From NCBI RefSeq assembly GCF_001194135.2, contig NC_068992.1, positions 24,530,715 to 24,575,532 on the forward strand: DNA of 44,818 nucleotides. Direction: 5' to 3'. This stretch comes from Octopus bimaculoides. Lineage: Eukaryota. A model generated the notes under the pieces. The model worked only from the letters and a program-made list of their open reading frames with translations, ran no database searches and was not told the DNA's origin. The position numbers and the translations under genes were made by a program. Shown here piece after piece: positions 26,322 to 40,959 of this stretch (its first letter is position 1; each line of letters begins with the position of its first letter).

Positions 26322-26649
26322 GGCGCAGGAGTGGCTGTGTGGTAAGTAGCTTGCTTACCAACCACCTGGTTCCGGGTTCATTCCCACTGCGTGGCATCTT
26401 GGGCAAGTGTCTTCTACTATAGCCTCGGGCCGACCAAAGGCTTGTGAGTGGATTTGGTAGACAGAAACTGAAAGTAGCCTGTCGTATATATGTATATATA
26501 TATATATATGTGTGTGTGTGTATATGTTTGTGTGTCTGTATTTGTTCCCCCAACACCGCTTGACAACCGATGGTGGTGTGTTTACGTCCCCATAACTTAA
26601 CGGTTCGGCAAAAAAGACCGATAGAATAAGTACTAGGCTTACAAAGAAT
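26322..26649 (+). mobile_element. SINE family A (head + microsatellite + tail 1), truncated by gap
   Basis: GGCGCAGGAGTGGCTGTGTGGTAAG...GGTTCATTCCCAC..TTGGGCAAGTGTCTT...GAATAAGTACTAGGC. Confidence 0.92.
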
Positions 26650-26973
26650 NNNNNNNNNNNNNNNNNNNNNNNNNNNNNNNNNNNNNNNNNNNNNNNNNNN
26701 NNNNNNNNNNNNNNNNNNNNNNNNNNNNNNNNNNNNNNNNNNNNNNNNNNNNNNNNNNNNNNNNNNNNNNNNNNNNNNNNNNNNNNNNNNNNNNNNNNNN
26801 NNNNNNNNNNNNNNNNNNNNNNNNNNNNNNNNNNNNNNNNNNNNNNNNNNNNNNNNNNNNNNNNNNNNNNNNNNNNNNNNNNNNNNNNNNNNNNNNNNNN
26901 NNNNNNNNNNNNNNNNNNNNNNNNATATATATATATATATATCAACCATCGTCATCATTTAATGTCTGTTATA

Positions 26974-27372
26974 TTCTTTTGTTCTTTTATTCTTTTATTT
27001 GTTTCAGTCATTTGACTGTGGCCATGCTGGAGCACTGCCTTTTAGTCGAACGAATCGACTCCGGGACTTATTCTTTGTATGCCTAGTACTTATTCTATTG
27101 GTCTCTTTTGCCAAACTGCTAAATGATGGTGATATAAACACACCAACATCAGTTGCCAAGCGATGCTGGTGGGGGAGCGGCAAACACAGACACACAAACA
27201 TATATATATGACAGGCTTCTTTCAGTTTCCGTCTACGAAATCTACTCACAAGGCTTTGGTCATGCCAAGGCTATAGTAGAAGACACTTGCCCAAGGTGCC
27301 ACACAGTGGGACTGAACCTGGAACCATGTGGTTGGTAAGTAAGCTACTTACCACATAGCCACTCCTGCGCCT
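26974..27372 (-). mobile_element. SINE family A, full length
   Basis: Runs from the tail (TTCTTTTA)n to the head end GCCACTCCTGCGCCT. Confidence 0.92.
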
Positions 27373-28052: not shown

Positions 28053-28214
28053 GGCGCAGGAGTAGCTGTGTGGTAAGTTGCTTGCTTACCAACCACATGG
28101 TTCTAGGTTCGGTTCCACTGTGTGACACCTTGGGCAAGTGTCTTCTACTACAGCCTTAGGCCAACCAAAGCCTTGTGAGTGGATTTGGTAGGCAGAAACT
28201 GAGAGAAGCCAGTC

Positions 28215-29180: not shown

Positions 29181-30030
29181 NNNNNNNNNNNNNNNNNNNN
29201 NNNNNNNNNNNNNNNNNNNNNNNNNNNNNNNNNNNNNNNNNNNNNNNNNNNNNNNNNNNNNNNNNNNNNNNNNNNNNNNNNNNNNNNNNNNNNNNNNNNN
29301 NNNNNNNNNNNNNNNNNNNNNNNNNNNNNNNNNNNNNNNNNNNNNNNNNNNNNNNNNNNNNNNNNNNNNNNNNNNNNNNNNNNNNNNNNNNNNNNNNNNN
29401 NNNNNNNNNNNNNNNNNNNNNNNNNNNNNNNNNNNNNNNNNNNNNNNNNNNNNNNNNNNNNNNNNNNNNNNNNNNNNNNNNNNNNNNNNNNNNNNNNNNN
29501 NNNNNNNNNNNNNNNNNNNNNNNNNNNNNNNNNNNNNNNNNNNNNNNNNNNNNNNNNNNNNNNNNNNNNNNNNNNNNNNNNNNNNNNNNNNNNNNNNNNN
29601 NNNNNNNNNNNNNNNNNNNNNNNNNNNNNNNNNNNNNNNNNNNNNNNNNNNNNNNNNNNNNNNNNNNNNNNNNNNNNNNNNNNNNNNNNNNNNNNNNNNN
29701 NNNNNNNNNNNNNNNNNNNNNNNNNNNNNNNNNNNNNNNNNNNNNNNNNNNNNNNNNNNNNNNNNNNNNNNNNNNNNNNNNNNNNNNNNNNNNNNNNNNN
29801 NNNNNNNNNNNNNNNNNNNNNNNNNNNNNNNNNNNNNNNNNNNNNNNNNNNNNNNNNNNNNNNNNNNNNNNNNNNNNNNNNNNNNNNNNNNNNNNNNNNN
29901 NNNNNNNNNNNNNNNNNNNNNNNNNNNNNNNNNNNNNNNNNNNNNNNNNNNNNNNNNNNNNNNNNNNNNNNNNNNNNNNNNNNNNNNNNNNNNNNNNNNN
30001 NNNNNNNNNNNNNNNNNNNNNNNNNNNNNN

Positions 30031-30852: not shown

Positions 30853-31051
30853 TCCTTTCTACTGAAGGCACAAGGTCTTGAAATTTGGTGGGGATGGGGA
30901 ATAGTTGATTACATCGACCCCAGCATTTCATTGGTACTTAAATTATTGACCCTGAAAGGATGAAAAGCAAAATCGACCTCATCGGAATTTGAACACAGAA
31001 CATACAAGCATTTTGCCCAACGTGCAAACAATTTTGCCAGCTCGCTGCCTT
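30853..31051 (-). mobile_element. SINE family B (B2) between (AAT)n tracts
   Basis: CCTTTCTACT..GGCACAAGG..GAAAGGATGAAAAGCAAAATCGACCTC..TTTGCCAGCTCGCTGCCTT. Confidence 0.88.
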
Positions 31052-31085
31052 AATAATACTAATAATAATAATAACAATAATAATA

Positions 31086-31462
31086 TTACCAGCAGATGAC
31101 AACGTTTCTCTAAAAGAAATGGAAAAACTTTCAAAATACAAAGACCTGGAAATAGAGGTAACTTGAATGTGGAATCTAAAAACAGAAACAATTCCTATCG
31201 TAGTAGGTGCCTTAGGTATAATAAAAAAATATTCAGACAAATACATAACAAAAACACCAGGACTTATAAATATATATAACATACAGAAAATTGCACTACT
31301 GGGTACTGCACACATTCTACGCAAAACACTTTCAATACAGTAACCATAAGAGCACCACAGCAAACCACAGCACATACCCAAGGCGCACAGAGCTGTGCTC
31401 GGTAGTGAAGTGAAAGCACGTTATAAAAATAAAACTACTGAACAATAATAATAATAATAATA
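31086..31462 (+). mobile_element. R4/Dong-like non-LTR retrotransposon 3' end, family 1 (restriction-like endonuclease C-terminus + 3' UTR + (AAT)n tail)
   Basis: 31086-31343 translates LPADDNVSLKEMEKLSKYKDLEIEVT*MWNLKTETIPIVVGALGIIKK..IQKIALLGTAHILRKTLSIQ*, with one premature stop. Confidence 0.85.
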
Positions 31463-31468
31463 AAAATA

Positions 31469-31673
31469 AGGATTTCAAATTTTTGTCACAAGGGTAACAT
31501 GGGGGAGGAGAATTAAGTCGATTACATTGAGCCCCCAGTCTTTCACTGGTACTTAAATTACCAACCACGAAAGGATGAAAAGTAAAGTCGACTTTGGCAG
31601 GATTTGAACTCAGAGCGTAAAAGAATGGCAAAGTACCACTATGCATTTTGCCCAGCATGCAAACGATTCTGCC
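31469..31673 (-). mobile_element. SINE family B (B2) between (AAT)n tracts
   Basis: GGATTTCAAATTTTTGTCACAAGG..GAAAGGATGAAAAGTAAAGTCGACTTTGGCAGGATTTGAACTC..AAACGATTCTGCCA. Confidence 0.85.
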
Positions 31674-31712
<39 letters not shown>

Positions 31713-31713
<1 letters not shown>

Positions 31714-32232
31714 GTGGACTTGACAGTGCAAAAAATTGGTATGACCACAAAGCTGAAGGCATCATTGAAAATAGAAATGCAAAGATCTTATGTGATTTTA
31801 TGATTCAGTGCGACCATGAGATCGAGAATAGGAAGCCGAACATAGTCTTAATTGAGAAAGAACACAAACTATGCTGGATCATAGCATGCCCAGCTGGCAA
31901 CAAGATATGCGATAAGGAAGAAAGAAAAGTTGAGAGATATGACAGGTTAGCTTGGGAAATTAAGCAGTTGTGGTGGATGAAAAAGGTAGCAGTAGTACCA
32001 CTAATTGTCGGAGCCCTGGGAACAGTGAGCAAAAATCTCGAGAAGTACATGGAACAAATAGGGGCTGCAATAAGGGTGCAGCACTTGCAGAAAACAGCAC
32101 TGCTTGGAACCGCTCGAATACTCCGTAAGGTGCTCGAAAAATAAGAGTTGTTACCTTAGTTCACTGATAGTGAACAGCTGACCCCATAGTACATCTCCAG
32201 CATTAGAAGCTGTGCAAAGGTAATAATAATGA
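31713..32232 (+). mobile_element. R4/Dong-like non-LTR retrotransposon 3' end, family 2
   Basis: Open frame to the stop at 32144: WYDHKAEGIIENRNAKILCDFMIQCDHEIENRKPNIVLIEK..KEERKVERYDRLAWEIKQLWWMKKVAVVPLIVGALG..LQKTALLGTARILRKVLEK*. 3' UTR ends in TAATAATAAT. Confidence 0.9.
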
Positions 32233-33879: not shown

Positions 33880-34275
33880 TTTTATTCTTTTACTTGTTTC
33901 AGTCATTTCACTGTGGCCATGCTGGAGTACCACAATGAAGGGCTTTTAGTCGAAGAAATCAACCCCAAAACTTATTCTTTGTAATGTCTGTTTTCCATGC
34001 TGTACTTATTATTCTATCGGTCACATTCACCATACTGCTAAGTTACAGGGACATAGACACATCAAAATTGATTAAGTGATGGTTGGGGGCAAACATACTC
34101 TCTCTCACACACACACACACACATACATACATATAACAGGCTTCTTTCAGTTTCCATCTTCCAGGTCCACTCACAAGGCTTTGATCAGCCCAAGGCTATA
34201 GAAAACGACCCTTGCTGAAGGTGCCATGAAGTGAGACTGAACCCAGAAGCATGTGGTTTGGAAGCAAGCTTCTTA
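33880..34275 (-). mobile_element. SINE family A (5'-truncated)
   Basis: Tail 1, (CA)n, and head to GAAGCAAGCTTCTT. Confidence 0.85.
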
Positions 34276-36260: not shown

Positions 36261-37707
36261 ATGAAGATCTGCTACATCCTATAATTCATCATTGTTATGC
36301 TAATTCGTACATGTAAATAAATTATATGTTGCCAGAAAGCTTCAATACAGCCGCAGCAGTTTAAACAACTTTCAGTGACATGTCTCAGCTCCAGTTCTTC
36401 TAGAATACATTGAAACATTTTTTTGTTGCAAGAAATTAAGACCAGATGTCTCATCTGAAGATAACTTGCTGCCTTCTTATACACCGTTATCAACTGCAAC
36501 AAGTTGTGGTTAGTTACCATTTTGCTCCCACAAGTCTCAGAAACCCAAAAAACGTCAGGACCACTTCTCCACTTTCTTGTAATTAAACCATGAAATACTA
36601 AGACACATCTATCTACAACAGTACAGTAAAAATCTTAAACACAGGTATACAGAGCAAGCATGAATTCAATAGCTTTGCTTACTCCAAGCATTACACTAAA
36701 ATAGGAGCATTCTGTGCAGCATGGAATTTTGTCAGTGAACAGGACATGGTCTCAAAGCGATGAAAATATTTTGGCAAATTAAATTTGAATGTTGAAGTGA
36801 ATCTAACGGTTTTTGTGTGTTTCTTAAATGGCTTATAAACACCTTCCATGCTGGAATTGTTTTCGTTCCAGCACACAATCTCAGATCAGGTCACTTGCTA
36901 AGCAAGTACATCTCCGTAATATGTACATACATACATACATANNNNNNNNNNNNNNNNNNNNNNNNNNNNNNNNNNNNNNNNNNNNNNNNNNNNNNNNNNN
37001 NNNNNNNNNNNNNNNNNNNNNNNNNNNNNNNNNNNNNNNNNNNNNNNNNNNNNNNNNNNNNNNNNNNNNNNNNNNNNNNNNNNNNNNNNNNNNNNNNNNN
37101 NNNNNNNNNNNNNNNNNNNNNNNNNNNNNNNNNNNNNNNNNNNNNNNNNNNNNNNNNNNNNNNNNNNNNNNNNNNNNNNNNNNNNNNNNNNNNNNNNNNN
37201 NNNNNNNNNNNNNNNNNNNNNNNNNNNNNNNNNNNNNNNNNNNNNNNNNNNNNNNNNNNNNNNNNNNNNNNNNNNNNNNNNNNNNNNNNNNNNNNNNNNN
37301 NNNNNNNNNNNNNNNNNNNNNNNNNNNNNNNNNNNNNNNNNNNNNNNNNNNNNNNNNNNNNNNNNNNNNNNNNNNNNNNNNNNNNNNNNNNNNNNNNNNN
37401 NNNNNNNNNNNNNNNNNNNNNNNNNNNNNNNNNNNNNNNNNNNNNNNNNNNNNNNNNNNNNNNNNNNNNNNNNNNNNNNNNNNNNNNNNNNNNNNNNNNN
37501 NNNNNNNNNNNNNNNNNNNNNNNNNNNNNNNNNNNNNNNNNNNNNNNNNNNNNNNNNNNNNNNNNNNNNNNNNNNNNNNNNNNNNNNNNNNNNNNNNNNN
37601 NNNNNNNNNNNNNNNNNNNNNNNNNNNNNNNNNNNNNNNNNNNNNNNNNNNNNNNNNNNNNNNNNNNNNNNNNNNNNNNNNNNNNNNNNNNNNNNNNNNN
37701 NNNNNNN

Positions 37708-38812: not shown

Positions 38813-39580
38813 NNNNNNNNNNNNNNNNNNNNNNNNNNNNNNNNNNNNNNNNNNNNNNNNNNNNNNNNNNNNNNNNNNNNNNNNNNNNNNNNNNNNNNNN
38901 NNNNNNNNNNNNNNNNNNNNNNNNNNNNNNNNNNNNNNNNNNNNNNNNNNNNNNNNNNNNNNNNNNNNNNNNNNNNNNNNNNNNNNNNNNNNNNNNNNNN
39001 NNNNNNNNNNNNNNNNNNNNNNNNNNNNNNNNNNNNNNNNNNNNNNNNNNNNNNNNNNNNNNNNNNNNNNNNNNNNNNNNNNNNNNNNNNNNNNNNNNNN
39101 NNNNNNNNNNNNNNNNNNNNNNNNNNNNNNNNNNNNNNNNNNNNNNNNNNNNNNNNNNNNNNNNNNNNNNNNNNNNNNNNNNNNNNNNNNNNNNNNNNNN
39201 NNNNNNNNNNNNNNNNNNNNNNNNNNNNNNNNNNNNNNNNNNNNNNNNNNNNNNNNNNNNNNNNNNNNNNNNNNNNNNNNNNNNNNNNNNNNNNNNNNNN
39301 NNNNNNNNNNNNNNNNNNNNNNNNNNNNNNNNNNNNNNNNNNNNNNNNNNNNNNNNNNNNNNNNNNNNNNNNNNNNNNNNNNNNNNNNNNNNNNNNNNNN
39401 NNNNNNNNNNNNNNNNNNNNNNNNNNNNNNNNNNNNNNNNNNNNNNNNNNNNNNNNNNNNNNNNNNNNNNNNNNNNNNNNNNNNNNNNNNNNNNNNNNNN
39501 NNNNNNNNNNNNNNNNNNNNNNNNNNNNNNNNNNNNNNNNNNNNNNNNNNNNNNNNNNNNNNNNNNNNNNNNNNNNNNNN

Positions 39581-39840
39581 NATACAAGGTATTGGAATCT
39601 TATATGTATACCATTCTGCCTAAACAATGGATTTACAAATACAATATCCCTACATTCATTCTCTATTTCCTACCTTATCTAAACTAACTATTGCTTAACC
39701 ATCCTCTCACACCGTCTCCGATGAAGGGATATAATAAATATCCTGGAAACAGCTGTAAGACCTTCTATTTATAAATGTTCTATAATGTACACAGCCTTGT
39801 TTTTTTGTATCTCATTACAAAAAGTAAATCCTATATATGT
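39581..39840 (+). mobile_element. Penelope-like element terminal fragment
   Basis: Carries a (C)CGATGAAG..GAAACAGCTGTA hammerhead motif in pyrimidine-rich flanks, as in Penelope pLTRs. Boundaries uncertain. Confidence 0.55.
39714..39761 (+). ncRNA. Minimal type I hammerhead ribozyme motif
   Basis: Stem I GTCT/AGAC; core CCGATGA; stem II GGATAT-AATAA-ATATCC; GAAA; stem III AC-AGCT-GT; GUA cleavage triplet ending at 39757. Confidence 0.62.
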
Positions 39841-40029
39841 ATATATTATTGCAATACAACAGTATTATTTTCCAGCTATTGTACTGTAATAATATTATCT
39901 TCGCCACCTGCACACACCTTTGCTTCTATACATCCAGTGAAGCTTTGCATAGCATTGTGCAGTTATCGACTGCTATTTTCAGCAAAACTTGGTGCCTTGT
40001 TGTGCCACTATTTTATATGTATATGACCC

Positions 40030-40209
40030 TCATGCCGGTGACATGTAAAAGCACCCACTACACTCTCAGAGTGGTTGGCGTTAGGAAGGGCATCCAGCTG
40101 TAGAAACTCTGTCAGATCAGATTGGAGCCTGGTGCAGCCTTCTGGTTCGCCAGTCCTCAGTCAAATCATCCAACCCATGCTAGCATGGAAGGCGGACGTT
40201 AAACGATGA

Positions 40210-40213
<4 letters not shown>
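40030..40213 (+). mobile_element. RTE-type 3' UTR fragment (family C)
   Basis: GTAAAAGCACCCACTACACTCTCAGAGTGGTTGGCGTTAGGAAGGGCATCC...GCGGACGTTAAACGATGATGAT. Confidence 0.9.
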
Positions 40214-40245
<32 letters not shown>

Positions 40246-40251
<6 letters not shown>

Positions 40252-40390
40252 AGCTTCTCACAGTTTCCATCTACCATATCCACTCACAAGGCTGAGGCTA
40301 TAGCAGAAGGCACTTGTCCAAGGTGTTACGCAGTGTGGTTGAACCAAACACCATGAGGTTCAGAAGCAAACTTCTTACCACACAGCCAAG
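40246..40390 (-). mobile_element. SINE family A head
   Basis: CAGTTTCCATCTACCATATCCACTCACAAGG..CACTTGTCCAAGGTG..CTTACCACACAGCCA. Confidence 0.8.
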
Positions 40391-40552
40391 TTTGTGTATA
40401 TGTTTGCACATGTTTGGTAAAGCAAATAATTTTATTAATATCAGTGAATTCATTCAATTCTCATTAAGAAGTTGAAAAGCAGAATGTGAGAAAGACAAGT
40501 ATTGCAGGCATGTTTATTATGATTCAAAACTCAGGAACAGAATTTCTCTTAC

Positions 40553-40612
40553 CTGGCTGGTGGAAACGGAAAAGATATTTTCACGTGTAACAGAAAAATG
40601 GTGAGAACTTAC
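40553..40612 (-). other. Candidate 60-nt exon / recursive-splicing exon
   Basis: Minus strand ...ATTATTTTTCTGTCTTGTCTTTCAG|GTAAGT...CCAGCCAG|GTAAGA. Only phase 0 is open (VSSHHFSVTRENIFSVSTSQ). Confidence 0.45.
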
Positions 40613-40939
40613 CTGAAAGACAAGACAGAAAAATAATATATCAGAACACAATAAAAGAATTGCAATAGAATTAAATTAAATAAAGAATTAGATGAATTCA
40701 ATAAAAATTTTTGATATTTTTAGTTTAACATCATTATATATGAACCACCGAAAGCTATGAAATGATATCCCAAATTTCTTATTAATAAAGCTTCTGTTAT
40801 TTAATCTTCAAAACAATAGTAAATAATTTAATATTTGGCGAAGTAATGGCATTATCCTCTCTCAATGTTTAGTAACATTTTACTGAACAATTAAAAATAA
40901 AATACGCTAGTAATTCAATTTTATTCTTGAGCTTATGTC

Positions 40940-40959
40940 TTATTCCATTATTTCATTTG

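What the first reader, a model, noticed from the sequence alone, without database searches (positions are those of the whole stretch)
40545..40760. Recursive-splice-site (ratchet point) architecture on the minus strand
Seen: a CTGAT branch-like motif, a long polypyrimidine tract and TTTCAG|GTAAGT, i.e. a 3' splice site that regenerates a perfect 5' splice site. No other AG occurs for ~140 nt upstream. Exactly 60 nt later there is a second strong donor, CAG|GTAAGA. The site lies in repeat-poor unique DNA. Established: this AG|GT plus short cryptic-exon layout defines recursive splicing in long Drosophila and vertebrate neural introns. To my knowledge it is not characterised in cephalopods, whose genes have very long introns. 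The alternative is an ordinary or alternatively spliced 20-codon exon (VSSHHFSVTRENIFSVSTSQ) that happens to begin with GTAAGT.
Basis: partly seen in the sequence, partly recalled or inferred. Interest (0 to 1): 0.7.

Follow-up and report, generated by a model that had tools for sequence, protein, structure and literature searches.

The report
Candidate recursive splice site, untested
A 60-base exon-like unit on the minus strand starts with a sequence that would rebuild a perfect splice donor once spliced, as at recursive splice sites in flies and vertebrates. Nothing available here shows that the region is transcribed or that the site is used.

Summary
These are CTGAT (branch A at 40641), an 81% pyrimidine tract, TTTCAG|GTAAGT (first base 40612), a 140-nt AG-free zone upstream, and CAG|GTAAGA exactly 60 nt later.

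The combination is not background. It holds the only AGGTAAGT in the window, the 3rd-best acceptor of 4,364 AGs, and the 1st and 5th best donors of 4,871 GTs. None of 300 local shuffles reproduced the full layout.

It meets all the sequence-level criteria of a ratchet point with a short cryptic RS-exon, including TT at -5/-6 and a downstream donor within 100 nt.

The 20-aa peptide matches nothing among 5.8 billion protein clusters. No coding exon was recognisable anywhere in the 44.8-kb window, so it is not a known coding exon.

Three defining features could not be tested: sense transcription inside a long intron, splicing intermediates, and cross-species conservation. The cephalopod origin was also not confirmed by any tool.

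My estimates: recursive site about 0.4, unannotated ordinary, poison or non-coding exon about 0.3, chance about 0.2. If real, it would be a new member of a known kind.

The parts
40615..40756 (-). AG-exclusion zone: 140 nt without AG upstream of the 3' splice site. It is AT-rich (GC 0.21) and 63% pyrimidine.
   Evidence: Not unusual on its own: 12 minus-strand and 15 plus-strand runs of at least 140 nt occur in the window.
40640..40644 (-). CTGAT, a putative branch point matching yUnAy. The branch A is at 40641, 29 nt upstream of the exon start.
   Evidence: Inferred from consensus only.
40615..40640 (-). [quoted passage not shown]
   Evidence: acceptor context ranks 3rd of 4,364 AGs in the window; TT at -5/-6 is found in 99.5% of fly ratchet points.
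40613..40614 (-). AG of the candidate recursive 3' splice site (TTTCAG|).
40607..40612 (-). GTAAGT at the first six bases of the unit. It would regenerate a consensus 5' splice site after ligation to an upstream exon (the ratchet-point donor).
   Evidence: It is the only AGGTAAGT in the window and the best-scoring donor of 4,871 GTs.
40553..40612 (-). 60-nt candidate RS-exon. One frame is open (VSSHHFSVTRENIFSVSTSQ) and two frames contain stops. Its 3' half is itself pyrimidine-rich.
   Evidence: No protein match. Not a tandem duplicate of the upstream 60 nt.
40547..40552 (-). GTAAGA of the downstream 5' splice site CAG|GTAAGA. This would be the exon-definition donor of the RS-exon.
   Evidence: 5th best donor of 4,871.

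Best explanation
The unit at 40612-40553 on the minus strand is a splicing-competent RS-exon, that is, a ratchet point, inside a long minus-strand intron.

Proposed mechanism; every step is inferred by analogy and none is shown here:
1. U2AF and U2 recognise the strong polypyrimidine tract, CAG and the CTGAT branch site.
2. U1 bound at the downstream CAG|GTAAGA defines the 60-nt unit by exon definition.
3. The upstream exon is ligated to base 40612, which removes the first part of the intron.
4. The junction now reads NNN|GTAAGT, a consensus 5' splice site.
5. That site competes with the GTAAGA donor 60 nt downstream.
6. If the regenerated site wins, the 60 nt leave with the rest of the intron and no trace remains in the mRNA.
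7. If the downstream donor wins, a 60-nt cassette is included. In one phase it preserves the frame and adds 20 aa. In the other two phases it introduces a stop.

The two donors are nearly equal in strength, so partial or regulated inclusion is as plausible as complete skipping.
For: - All the sequence elements are present and contiguous.
- The unit is the best acceptor-plus-donor pair in the window. Its acceptor ranks 3rd of 4,364, and its donors rank 1st and 5th of 4,871.
- The full layout appeared in 0 of 300 local shuffles, and its expectation from real-sequence frequencies is about 1e-5 to 5e-4 per window.
- It matches the published definition. Fly ratchet points are tandem acceptor|donor pairs with a short (about 50 nt) cryptic RS-exon and a downstream donor (PMC8605326).
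- TT at -5/-6 occurs in 99.5% of fly ratchet points (10.1101/006163).
- Most fly sites have a second 5' splice site less than 100 nt downstream (PMC6224609).
- Mouse RS sites are enriched for AGGTAAGT and polypyrimidine (PMC8797253).
- The peptide is absent from 5.8 billion protein clusters.
- None of 100 non-repeat ORFs from both strands of the window matches any protein. This is compatible with a deep-intronic position where the intron would be at least about 45 kb.
Against: - There is no evidence that the minus strand is transcribed or that the window lies in a gene. It could equally be intergenic.
- No conservation data could be obtained.
- The unit is 60 nt, a multiple of three, with an open frame. 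Fly cryptic RS-exons are 'generally out of frame', so this looks more like an expressed cassette.
- The downstream donor CAG|GTAAGA (11.3 bits) is about as strong as the regenerated donor can be (8.9 bits from +1 to +6, plus an unknown exonic part). The donor hierarchy typical of always-skipped RS-exons is therefore not evident.
- In mouse brain, only 19 of 84 AGGT sites supported by junction reads were true RS sites, and 46 were unannotated exons.
- The scores come from my own crude position-weight matrices, not from MaxEntScan or a cephalopod-trained model.
Confidence: 0.4

Rival explanations
1. It is an ordinary but unannotated exon that happens to begin with GTAAGT. It could be an alternative cassette, a poison exon, a UTR exon or a lncRNA exon. 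It would be included in mature RNA through its downstream donor, with re-splicing from the regenerated site absent or minor.
For: - Both splice sites are strong and exon-like, and the length of 60 nt is a multiple of three with one open frame.
- The downstream donor is as strong as the regenerated one.
- In mouse brain, most AGGT candidates supported by junction reads (46 of 84) were unannotated exons.
- Hundreds of annotated human exons begin with a 5' splice-site-like motif and are still included.
Against: - The peptide matches no predicted or annotated protein, so the unit is not a known coding exon.
- No neighbouring coding exon was recognisable in 44.8 kb on either strand.
- A perfect GTAAGT at an exon start is rare and makes re-splicing mechanistically likely. 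This rival therefore overlaps the RS-exon model rather than excluding it.
Confidence: 0.3
2. It is a chance juxtaposition of splice-like motifs in AT-rich, T-rich non-coding DNA, either intergenic or on the untranscribed or antisense strand. It has no function, and it was noticed because the reader was scanning for patterns.
For: - The bare octamer is expected 1.26 times per window.
- The looser polyY-CAGGTAAGT pattern appeared in 15 of 100 whole-window shuffles.
- AG-free runs of at least 140 nt are common here.
- An open frame in 60 nt is uninformative.
- There is no independent evidence of transcription, conservation or a host gene.
- A genome of billions of bases would hold some such sites by chance.
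Against: - The full combination is rare: 0 of 300 local shuffles and a joint expectation of about 1e-5 to 5e-4 per window.
- Two of the five best donors and the third-best acceptor in 81 kb of sequence (both strands) fall within 62 nt on one strand.
Confidence: 0.2
3. The splice-like unit belongs to a low-copy or old transposable element. This would be an exonisation-prone fragment that is single-copy in this window but repeated elsewhere in the genome.
For: The window is dense in repeats. About 29% is repeated within the window itself. SINE-like copies lie immediately downstream at 40023-40396, and the SINE head itself carries donor-like GTGGTAAG sites.
Against: The region 40440-40940 has no similarity to anything else in the window and no protein-level hit. 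The two donors of the unit lie outside the SINE.
Confidence: 0.1

Closest known systems
Drosophila intronic ratchet points with cryptic RS-exons (Ubx, kuz, Bx, luna; Hatton 1998, Burnette 2005, Duff 2015, Joseph 2018/2021)
   Same: It has a juxtaposed polyY-AG|GTAAGT, TT at -5/-6, a short unit (60 nt against about 50 nt) closed by a second donor less than 100 nt downstream, and stops in two of three frames.
   Different: The host intron, transcription and conservation are unknown. The unit preserves the reading frame and has one open frame. The downstream donor is not clearly weaker than the regenerated donor. The organism is neither an insect nor a vertebrate (probably an octopod, unconfirmed).
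Expressed RS-exons: Ubx microexons mI/mII (51 nt) and EJC-protected annotated RS-exons of vertebrates (Blazquez 2018)
   Same: It is an exon that starts with a 5' splice-site motif, has a frame-preserving short length, and has two competing donors of similar strength.
   Different: No evidence of inclusion exists here, and the peptide is absent from all predicted proteins searched. Whether EJC repression applies in this lineage is unknown.
Vertebrate cryptic RS-exons in long neuronal genes (CADM2, LSAMP, etc.; Sibley 2015; mouse brain study PMC8797253)
   Same: It shares the AGGTAAGT motif, a strong polypyrimidine tract, the exon-definition layout, and PTC-generating frames.
   Different: Vertebrate sites lie in introns longer than 51 kb within genes longer than 294 kb, mostly in the first or second intron. 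None of these context features can be checked here.

Membership tests
Intronic recursive splice site (ratchet point) with cryptic RS-exon | [quoted passage not shown] | tested here: met
   TTTCAG|GTAAGT at 40618-40607 on the minus strand, with 21/26 pyrimidines upstream. It is the only AGGTAAGT in the window.
Intronic recursive splice site (ratchet point) with cryptic RS-exon | TT at positions -5/-6 of the 3' splice site (99.5% of fly ratchet points) | tested here: met
   The sequence ...tcTTtcag| is seen. The criterion comes from 10.1101/006163.
Intronic recursive splice site (ratchet point) with cryptic RS-exon | A second 5' splice site less than 100 nt downstream, defining a short RS-exon (about 50 nt) | tested here: met
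   CAG|GTAAGA lies 60 nt downstream and is the 5th best donor of 4,871.
Intronic recursive splice site (ratchet point) with cryptic RS-exon | Lies in sense orientation inside a long intron (tens of kb or more) of an expressed gene | not testable with these tools
   No annotation or RNA data are available. The only indirect evidence is that no coding exon was recognisable in the 44.8-kb window on either strand.
Intronic recursive splice site (ratchet point) with cryptic RS-exon | Splicing intermediates: upstream-exon-to-site junction reads, saw-tooth nascent RNA coverage, and lariats from the regenerated donor | not testable with these tools
   No transcriptome data can be reached from here.
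Intronic recursive splice site (ratchet point) with cryptic RS-exon | Strong cross-species conservation of the AG|GT motif and of the downstream donor, with a poorly conserved exon body | not testable with these tools
   No related genome could be reached. The peptide search found nothing, a 24-mer metagenome scan gave 0 hits, and window ORFs are not on record.
Intronic recursive splice site (ratchet point) with cryptic RS-exon | Regenerated donor stronger than the RS-exon donor, so that the RS-exon is skipped | tested here: inconclusive
   Positions +1 to +6 score 8.9 bits for GTAAGT against 7.3 bits for GTAAGA. The totals are 11.3 bits for CAG|GTAAGA against an unknown value for the regenerated site, because the upstream exon end is unknown.
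Intronic recursive splice site (ratchet point) with cryptic RS-exon | RS-exon absent from mRNA, and generally out of frame or carrying a PTC | tested here: inconclusive
   The peptide is absent from 5.8 billion protein clusters, and two of three frames have stops. However, the length is 60 nt (a multiple of three) with one open frame.
Ordinary protein-coding cassette exon | Encodes a peptide found in an annotated or predicted protein, or conserved at protein level | tested here: not met
   No candidate shares three 5-residue words with the 52-aa read-through that includes the 20-aa peptide.
Ordinary protein-coding cassette exon | Neighbouring coding exons of the same gene | tested here: not met
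   A composite of 100 non-repeat ORFs of at least 35 aa from both strands gave 2,004 word-sharing candidates, none with E <= 0.01. Exons shorter than 35 aa, or lying outside the window, would be missed.

The most novel reading that the evidence does not exclude
The site is a functional ratchet point in a long intron of a cephalopod gene. That would show that RS-exon-mediated recursive splicing operates in lophotrochozoans as it does in flies and vertebrates, and would give a concrete locus for testing it.
Probability: 0.35. Interest if true: 0.45.

Novelty: new member of a known kind. Interest (0 to 1): 0.3.

Why it matters
Recursive splicing has been documented in Drosophila and in vertebrates. 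The paper library held here contains no study of it in molluscs or cephalopods.

A validated site in a cephalopod would extend the mechanism to a third major bilaterian branch. It would support an ancestral origin tied to long introns. It would also let one ask whether this lineage follows the fly pattern (many cryptic RS-exons, weak EJC repression) or the deuterostome pattern (many included RS-exons) described in PMC6224609.

On present evidence this is one motif-level candidate and not a demonstration. Its value is as a precise, cheaply testable locus.

Tried and rejected
1. Coding-exon test. A protein search with the 52-aa read-through ORF containing the 20-aa peptide found no candidate.
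2. Host-gene search. I scanned by eye and by PWM for exons on both strands. I then ran a 4,855-aa composite of 100 non-repeat ORFs and got no hit.
3. Taxon confirmation. The RT-like ORF search returned only distant homologues (74% identity or less). These came from unnamed ENA contigs, an octocoral and a ctenophore. A literature search for the SINE sequence string found nothing. Cephalopod origin therefore rests on my memory of the octopus SINE.
4. Locating the window or an orthologous locus. Two window ORFs are not on record, and a 24-mer metagenome scan gave 0 hits.
5. Tandem duplication as the source of the two AGGTAAG motifs. I rejected this: TRF found nothing, and the alignment showed about 46% identity.
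6. A repeat origin within the window. I rejected this for 40440-40940.
7. Rfam and tRNA scans of the window were empty.
8. The 140-nt AG-free zone as independent evidence. I rejected this because such runs are common here.
9. I did not use the exhaustive representative search or structure prediction. A 20-aa peptide cannot give a significant remote hit or a meaningful model.

Full report
**Observation.** The described layout is present on the minus strand base for base.
- CTGAT lies at 40644-40640, with its A at 40641, 29 nt upstream of the exon start.
- The tract 40640-40615 is 21/26 pyrimidines.
- TTTCAG|GTAAGT lies at 40618-40607, and the first base after the AG is 40612.
- The nearest upstream AG is at -144.
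- The 60-nt unit 40612-40553 ends in CAG and is followed by GTAAGA.
- Only frame 1 of the unit is open (VSSHHFSVTRENIFSVSTSQ). The other two frames have stops.

**Chance.** The bare octamer AGGTAAGT means little: it occurs once and is expected 1.26 times per window. A looser polyY-CAGGTAAGT pattern appeared in 15 of 100 shuffles. The full combination is rare.
- A strong polypyrimidine acceptor followed by GTAAGT is expected 0.017 times per window.
- Adding a strong donor 25-150 nt downstream gave 0 of 300 local dinucleotide-preserving shuffles.
- Within the real sequence, the acceptor context ranks 3rd of 4,364 AGs. CAG|GTAAGT is the best and CAG|GTAAGA the 5th best of 4,871 GT sites.
- The joint expectation from observed frequencies is about 1e-5 to 5e-4 per window, depending on thresholds.
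- The unit is also the top acceptor-donor pair in the window.

These scores use my own approximate weight matrices, not a trained model. The thresholds were chosen after seeing the site. AG-free runs of at least 140 nt occur 27 times in the window. An open frame in 60 nt is expected more than half the time.

**Context.** The window is draft eukaryotic genomic DNA.
- It has 10 N gaps, abundant TA/CA/ATT microsatellites, and about 35% GC.
- It contains mariner-like transposase fragments, an RT-like retroelement tail, and several SINE-like families. About 29% of the window is repeated within itself.
- The segment 40440-40940 around the site has no paralogue in the window. SINE-like copies begin about 155 nt downstream, and an ATT microsatellite lies about 340 nt upstream.
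- The two AGGTAAG motifs are not products of a tandem duplication.
- Rfam and tRNA scans found nothing.

**Is it a known coding exon?** The evidence says no. The 52-aa read-through translation that includes the 20-aa peptide shares fewer than three 5-residue words with every protein in a 5.8-billion-cluster collection.

I found no convincing coding exon by eye or by splice-site scanning on either strand. A composite query of 100 non-repeat, non-low-complexity ORFs of at least 35 aa from both strands gave no hit at E <= 0.01. The window therefore looks entirely non-coding. That fits a deep-intronic position, where the intron would be at least about 45 kb. It fits intergenic DNA equally well.

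**Taxon.** No tool confirmed a cephalopod origin.
- The RT-like ORF has only distant homologues (74% or less) in unnamed ENA contigs, an octocoral and a ctenophore.
- The window carries copies of a SINE whose sequence (...GGTGCTCCAGCATGGCCACAGTCAAATGACTGAAAC...) I recall as the abundant octopus SINE. This is a recollection, not a test.
- A literature search for that sequence string found nothing.

**Comparison with known systems.** Published definitions were read.
- Fly ratchet points are tandem acceptor|donor motifs in long introns, with a short (about 50 nt) cryptic RS-exon closed by a downstream donor.
- 99.5% of fly ratchet points have TT at -5/-6.
- Most have a second 5' splice site less than 100 nt downstream.
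- Mouse RS sites are enriched for AGGTAAGT and pyrimidines. They lie in introns longer than 51 kb within long genes.

The present site meets every sequence-level criterion. It departs from the typical always-skipped cryptic RS-exon in two ways. First, it is frame-preserving (60 nt) with an open frame. Second, its downstream donor is about as strong as the regenerated donor can be. That profile resembles expressed RS-exons such as Ubx mI/mII or a regulated cassette. The context criteria could not be tested here: a long transcribed intron in sense orientation, splicing intermediates, and conservation.

**Weighing the hypotheses.** Chance expectation is low. Mechanistically, any exon that begins with GTAAGT regenerates a strong donor once it is spliced. 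I therefore rate a functional RS-exon or ratchet point as the single most likely reading, at about 0.4.

The main rival is an unannotated ordinary, poison or non-coding exon, at about 0.3. In mouse brain, 46 of 84 AGGT candidates supported by junction reads turned out to be such exons, and only 19 were true RS sites. Pure chance, at about 0.2, and a low-copy repeat origin, at about 0.1, remain open because nothing shows transcription. These readings overlap. An exon starting with GTAAGT is a 'putative RS-exon' by the definition in PMC6224609.

**Novelty and interest.** Recursive splicing is well established in flies and vertebrates. The library held here has no study of it in molluscs or cephalopods. 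If real, the site is a new member of a known kind in a new lineage. It would be a useful test locus, but it would not surprise a splicing specialist. As it stands it is a well-formed candidate supported by sequence alone, so I set interest at 0.3.

Noticed in passing
window 31608-32141 (+) and about 30940-31420: An RT-like retroelement C-terminal ORF is present, with a second degraded copy beside it. Both are sense on the plus strand. Homologues are widespread in marine invertebrates: the best is 74% identical on an ENA metaMDBG-style 1.55-Mb contig, and the only named hits are Paramuricea clavata and Mnemiopsis leidyi.
   Followed up: partly
window 10602-10890 (-) and 18135-18330 (-): Translations look like fragments of a mariner/Tc1-type transposase (for example 'LHDNARLLTA' and 'SGRPSLSQNKELVEKAWQIVLED'). 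I recognised them by eye only.
   Followed up: no
window 40023-40396, with copies at about 14396-14521, 18831-18939, 9695-9812, 21361-21538, 26332-26509, 27200-27361, 28065-28209, 34123-34275: Two adjacent SINE-like repeat families each have at least 6 copies in the window, in both orientations. The SINE head (GGCTGTGTGGTAAGAAG/T) supplies donor-like GTGGTAAGT sites (27351-, 28073+, 26342+). This inflates the count of 'strong donors' in this genome.
   Followed up: partly
window 40612, 16147, 14124, 11306, 40552, 4768 (all minus strand): The six best donor-like sites by PWM in the whole window all lie on the minus strand, as do 8 of the top 10. This may be chance (roughly p = 0.03) or a strand property. 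Its meaning is unclear.
   Followed up: no
window 11155 (-) and 12835 (-): Two weaker polyY-AG|GT sites also lie on the minus strand. One is ttattcAAG|GTAGGC at 11155, with a donor 42 nt downstream. The other is gcttCAG|GTGATT at 12835. No such sites occur on the plus strand at the same threshold. The 11155 site abuts a TA/CA microsatellite and a repeated element.
   Followed up: partly
window 40553-40582 (-): The 3' half of the 60-nt unit is itself pyrimidine-rich (TCTTTTCCGTTTCCACC) and ends in CAG|GTAAGA. The second donor is therefore also a weaker AG|GT ratchet-like motif (acceptor score 4.4), giving two AG|GTAAG motifs in tandem 60 nt apart.
   Followed up: partly
window 6936-7532, 9997-10371, 20986-21201, 26650-26924, 29181-30030, 36942-37707, 38813-39581, 44265-44502 and two short gaps: There are ten assembly gaps (4,138 N in total), mostly bordered by TA/CA microsatellites. 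The region is a draft assembly, and distances across the gaps are uncertain.
   Followed up: no
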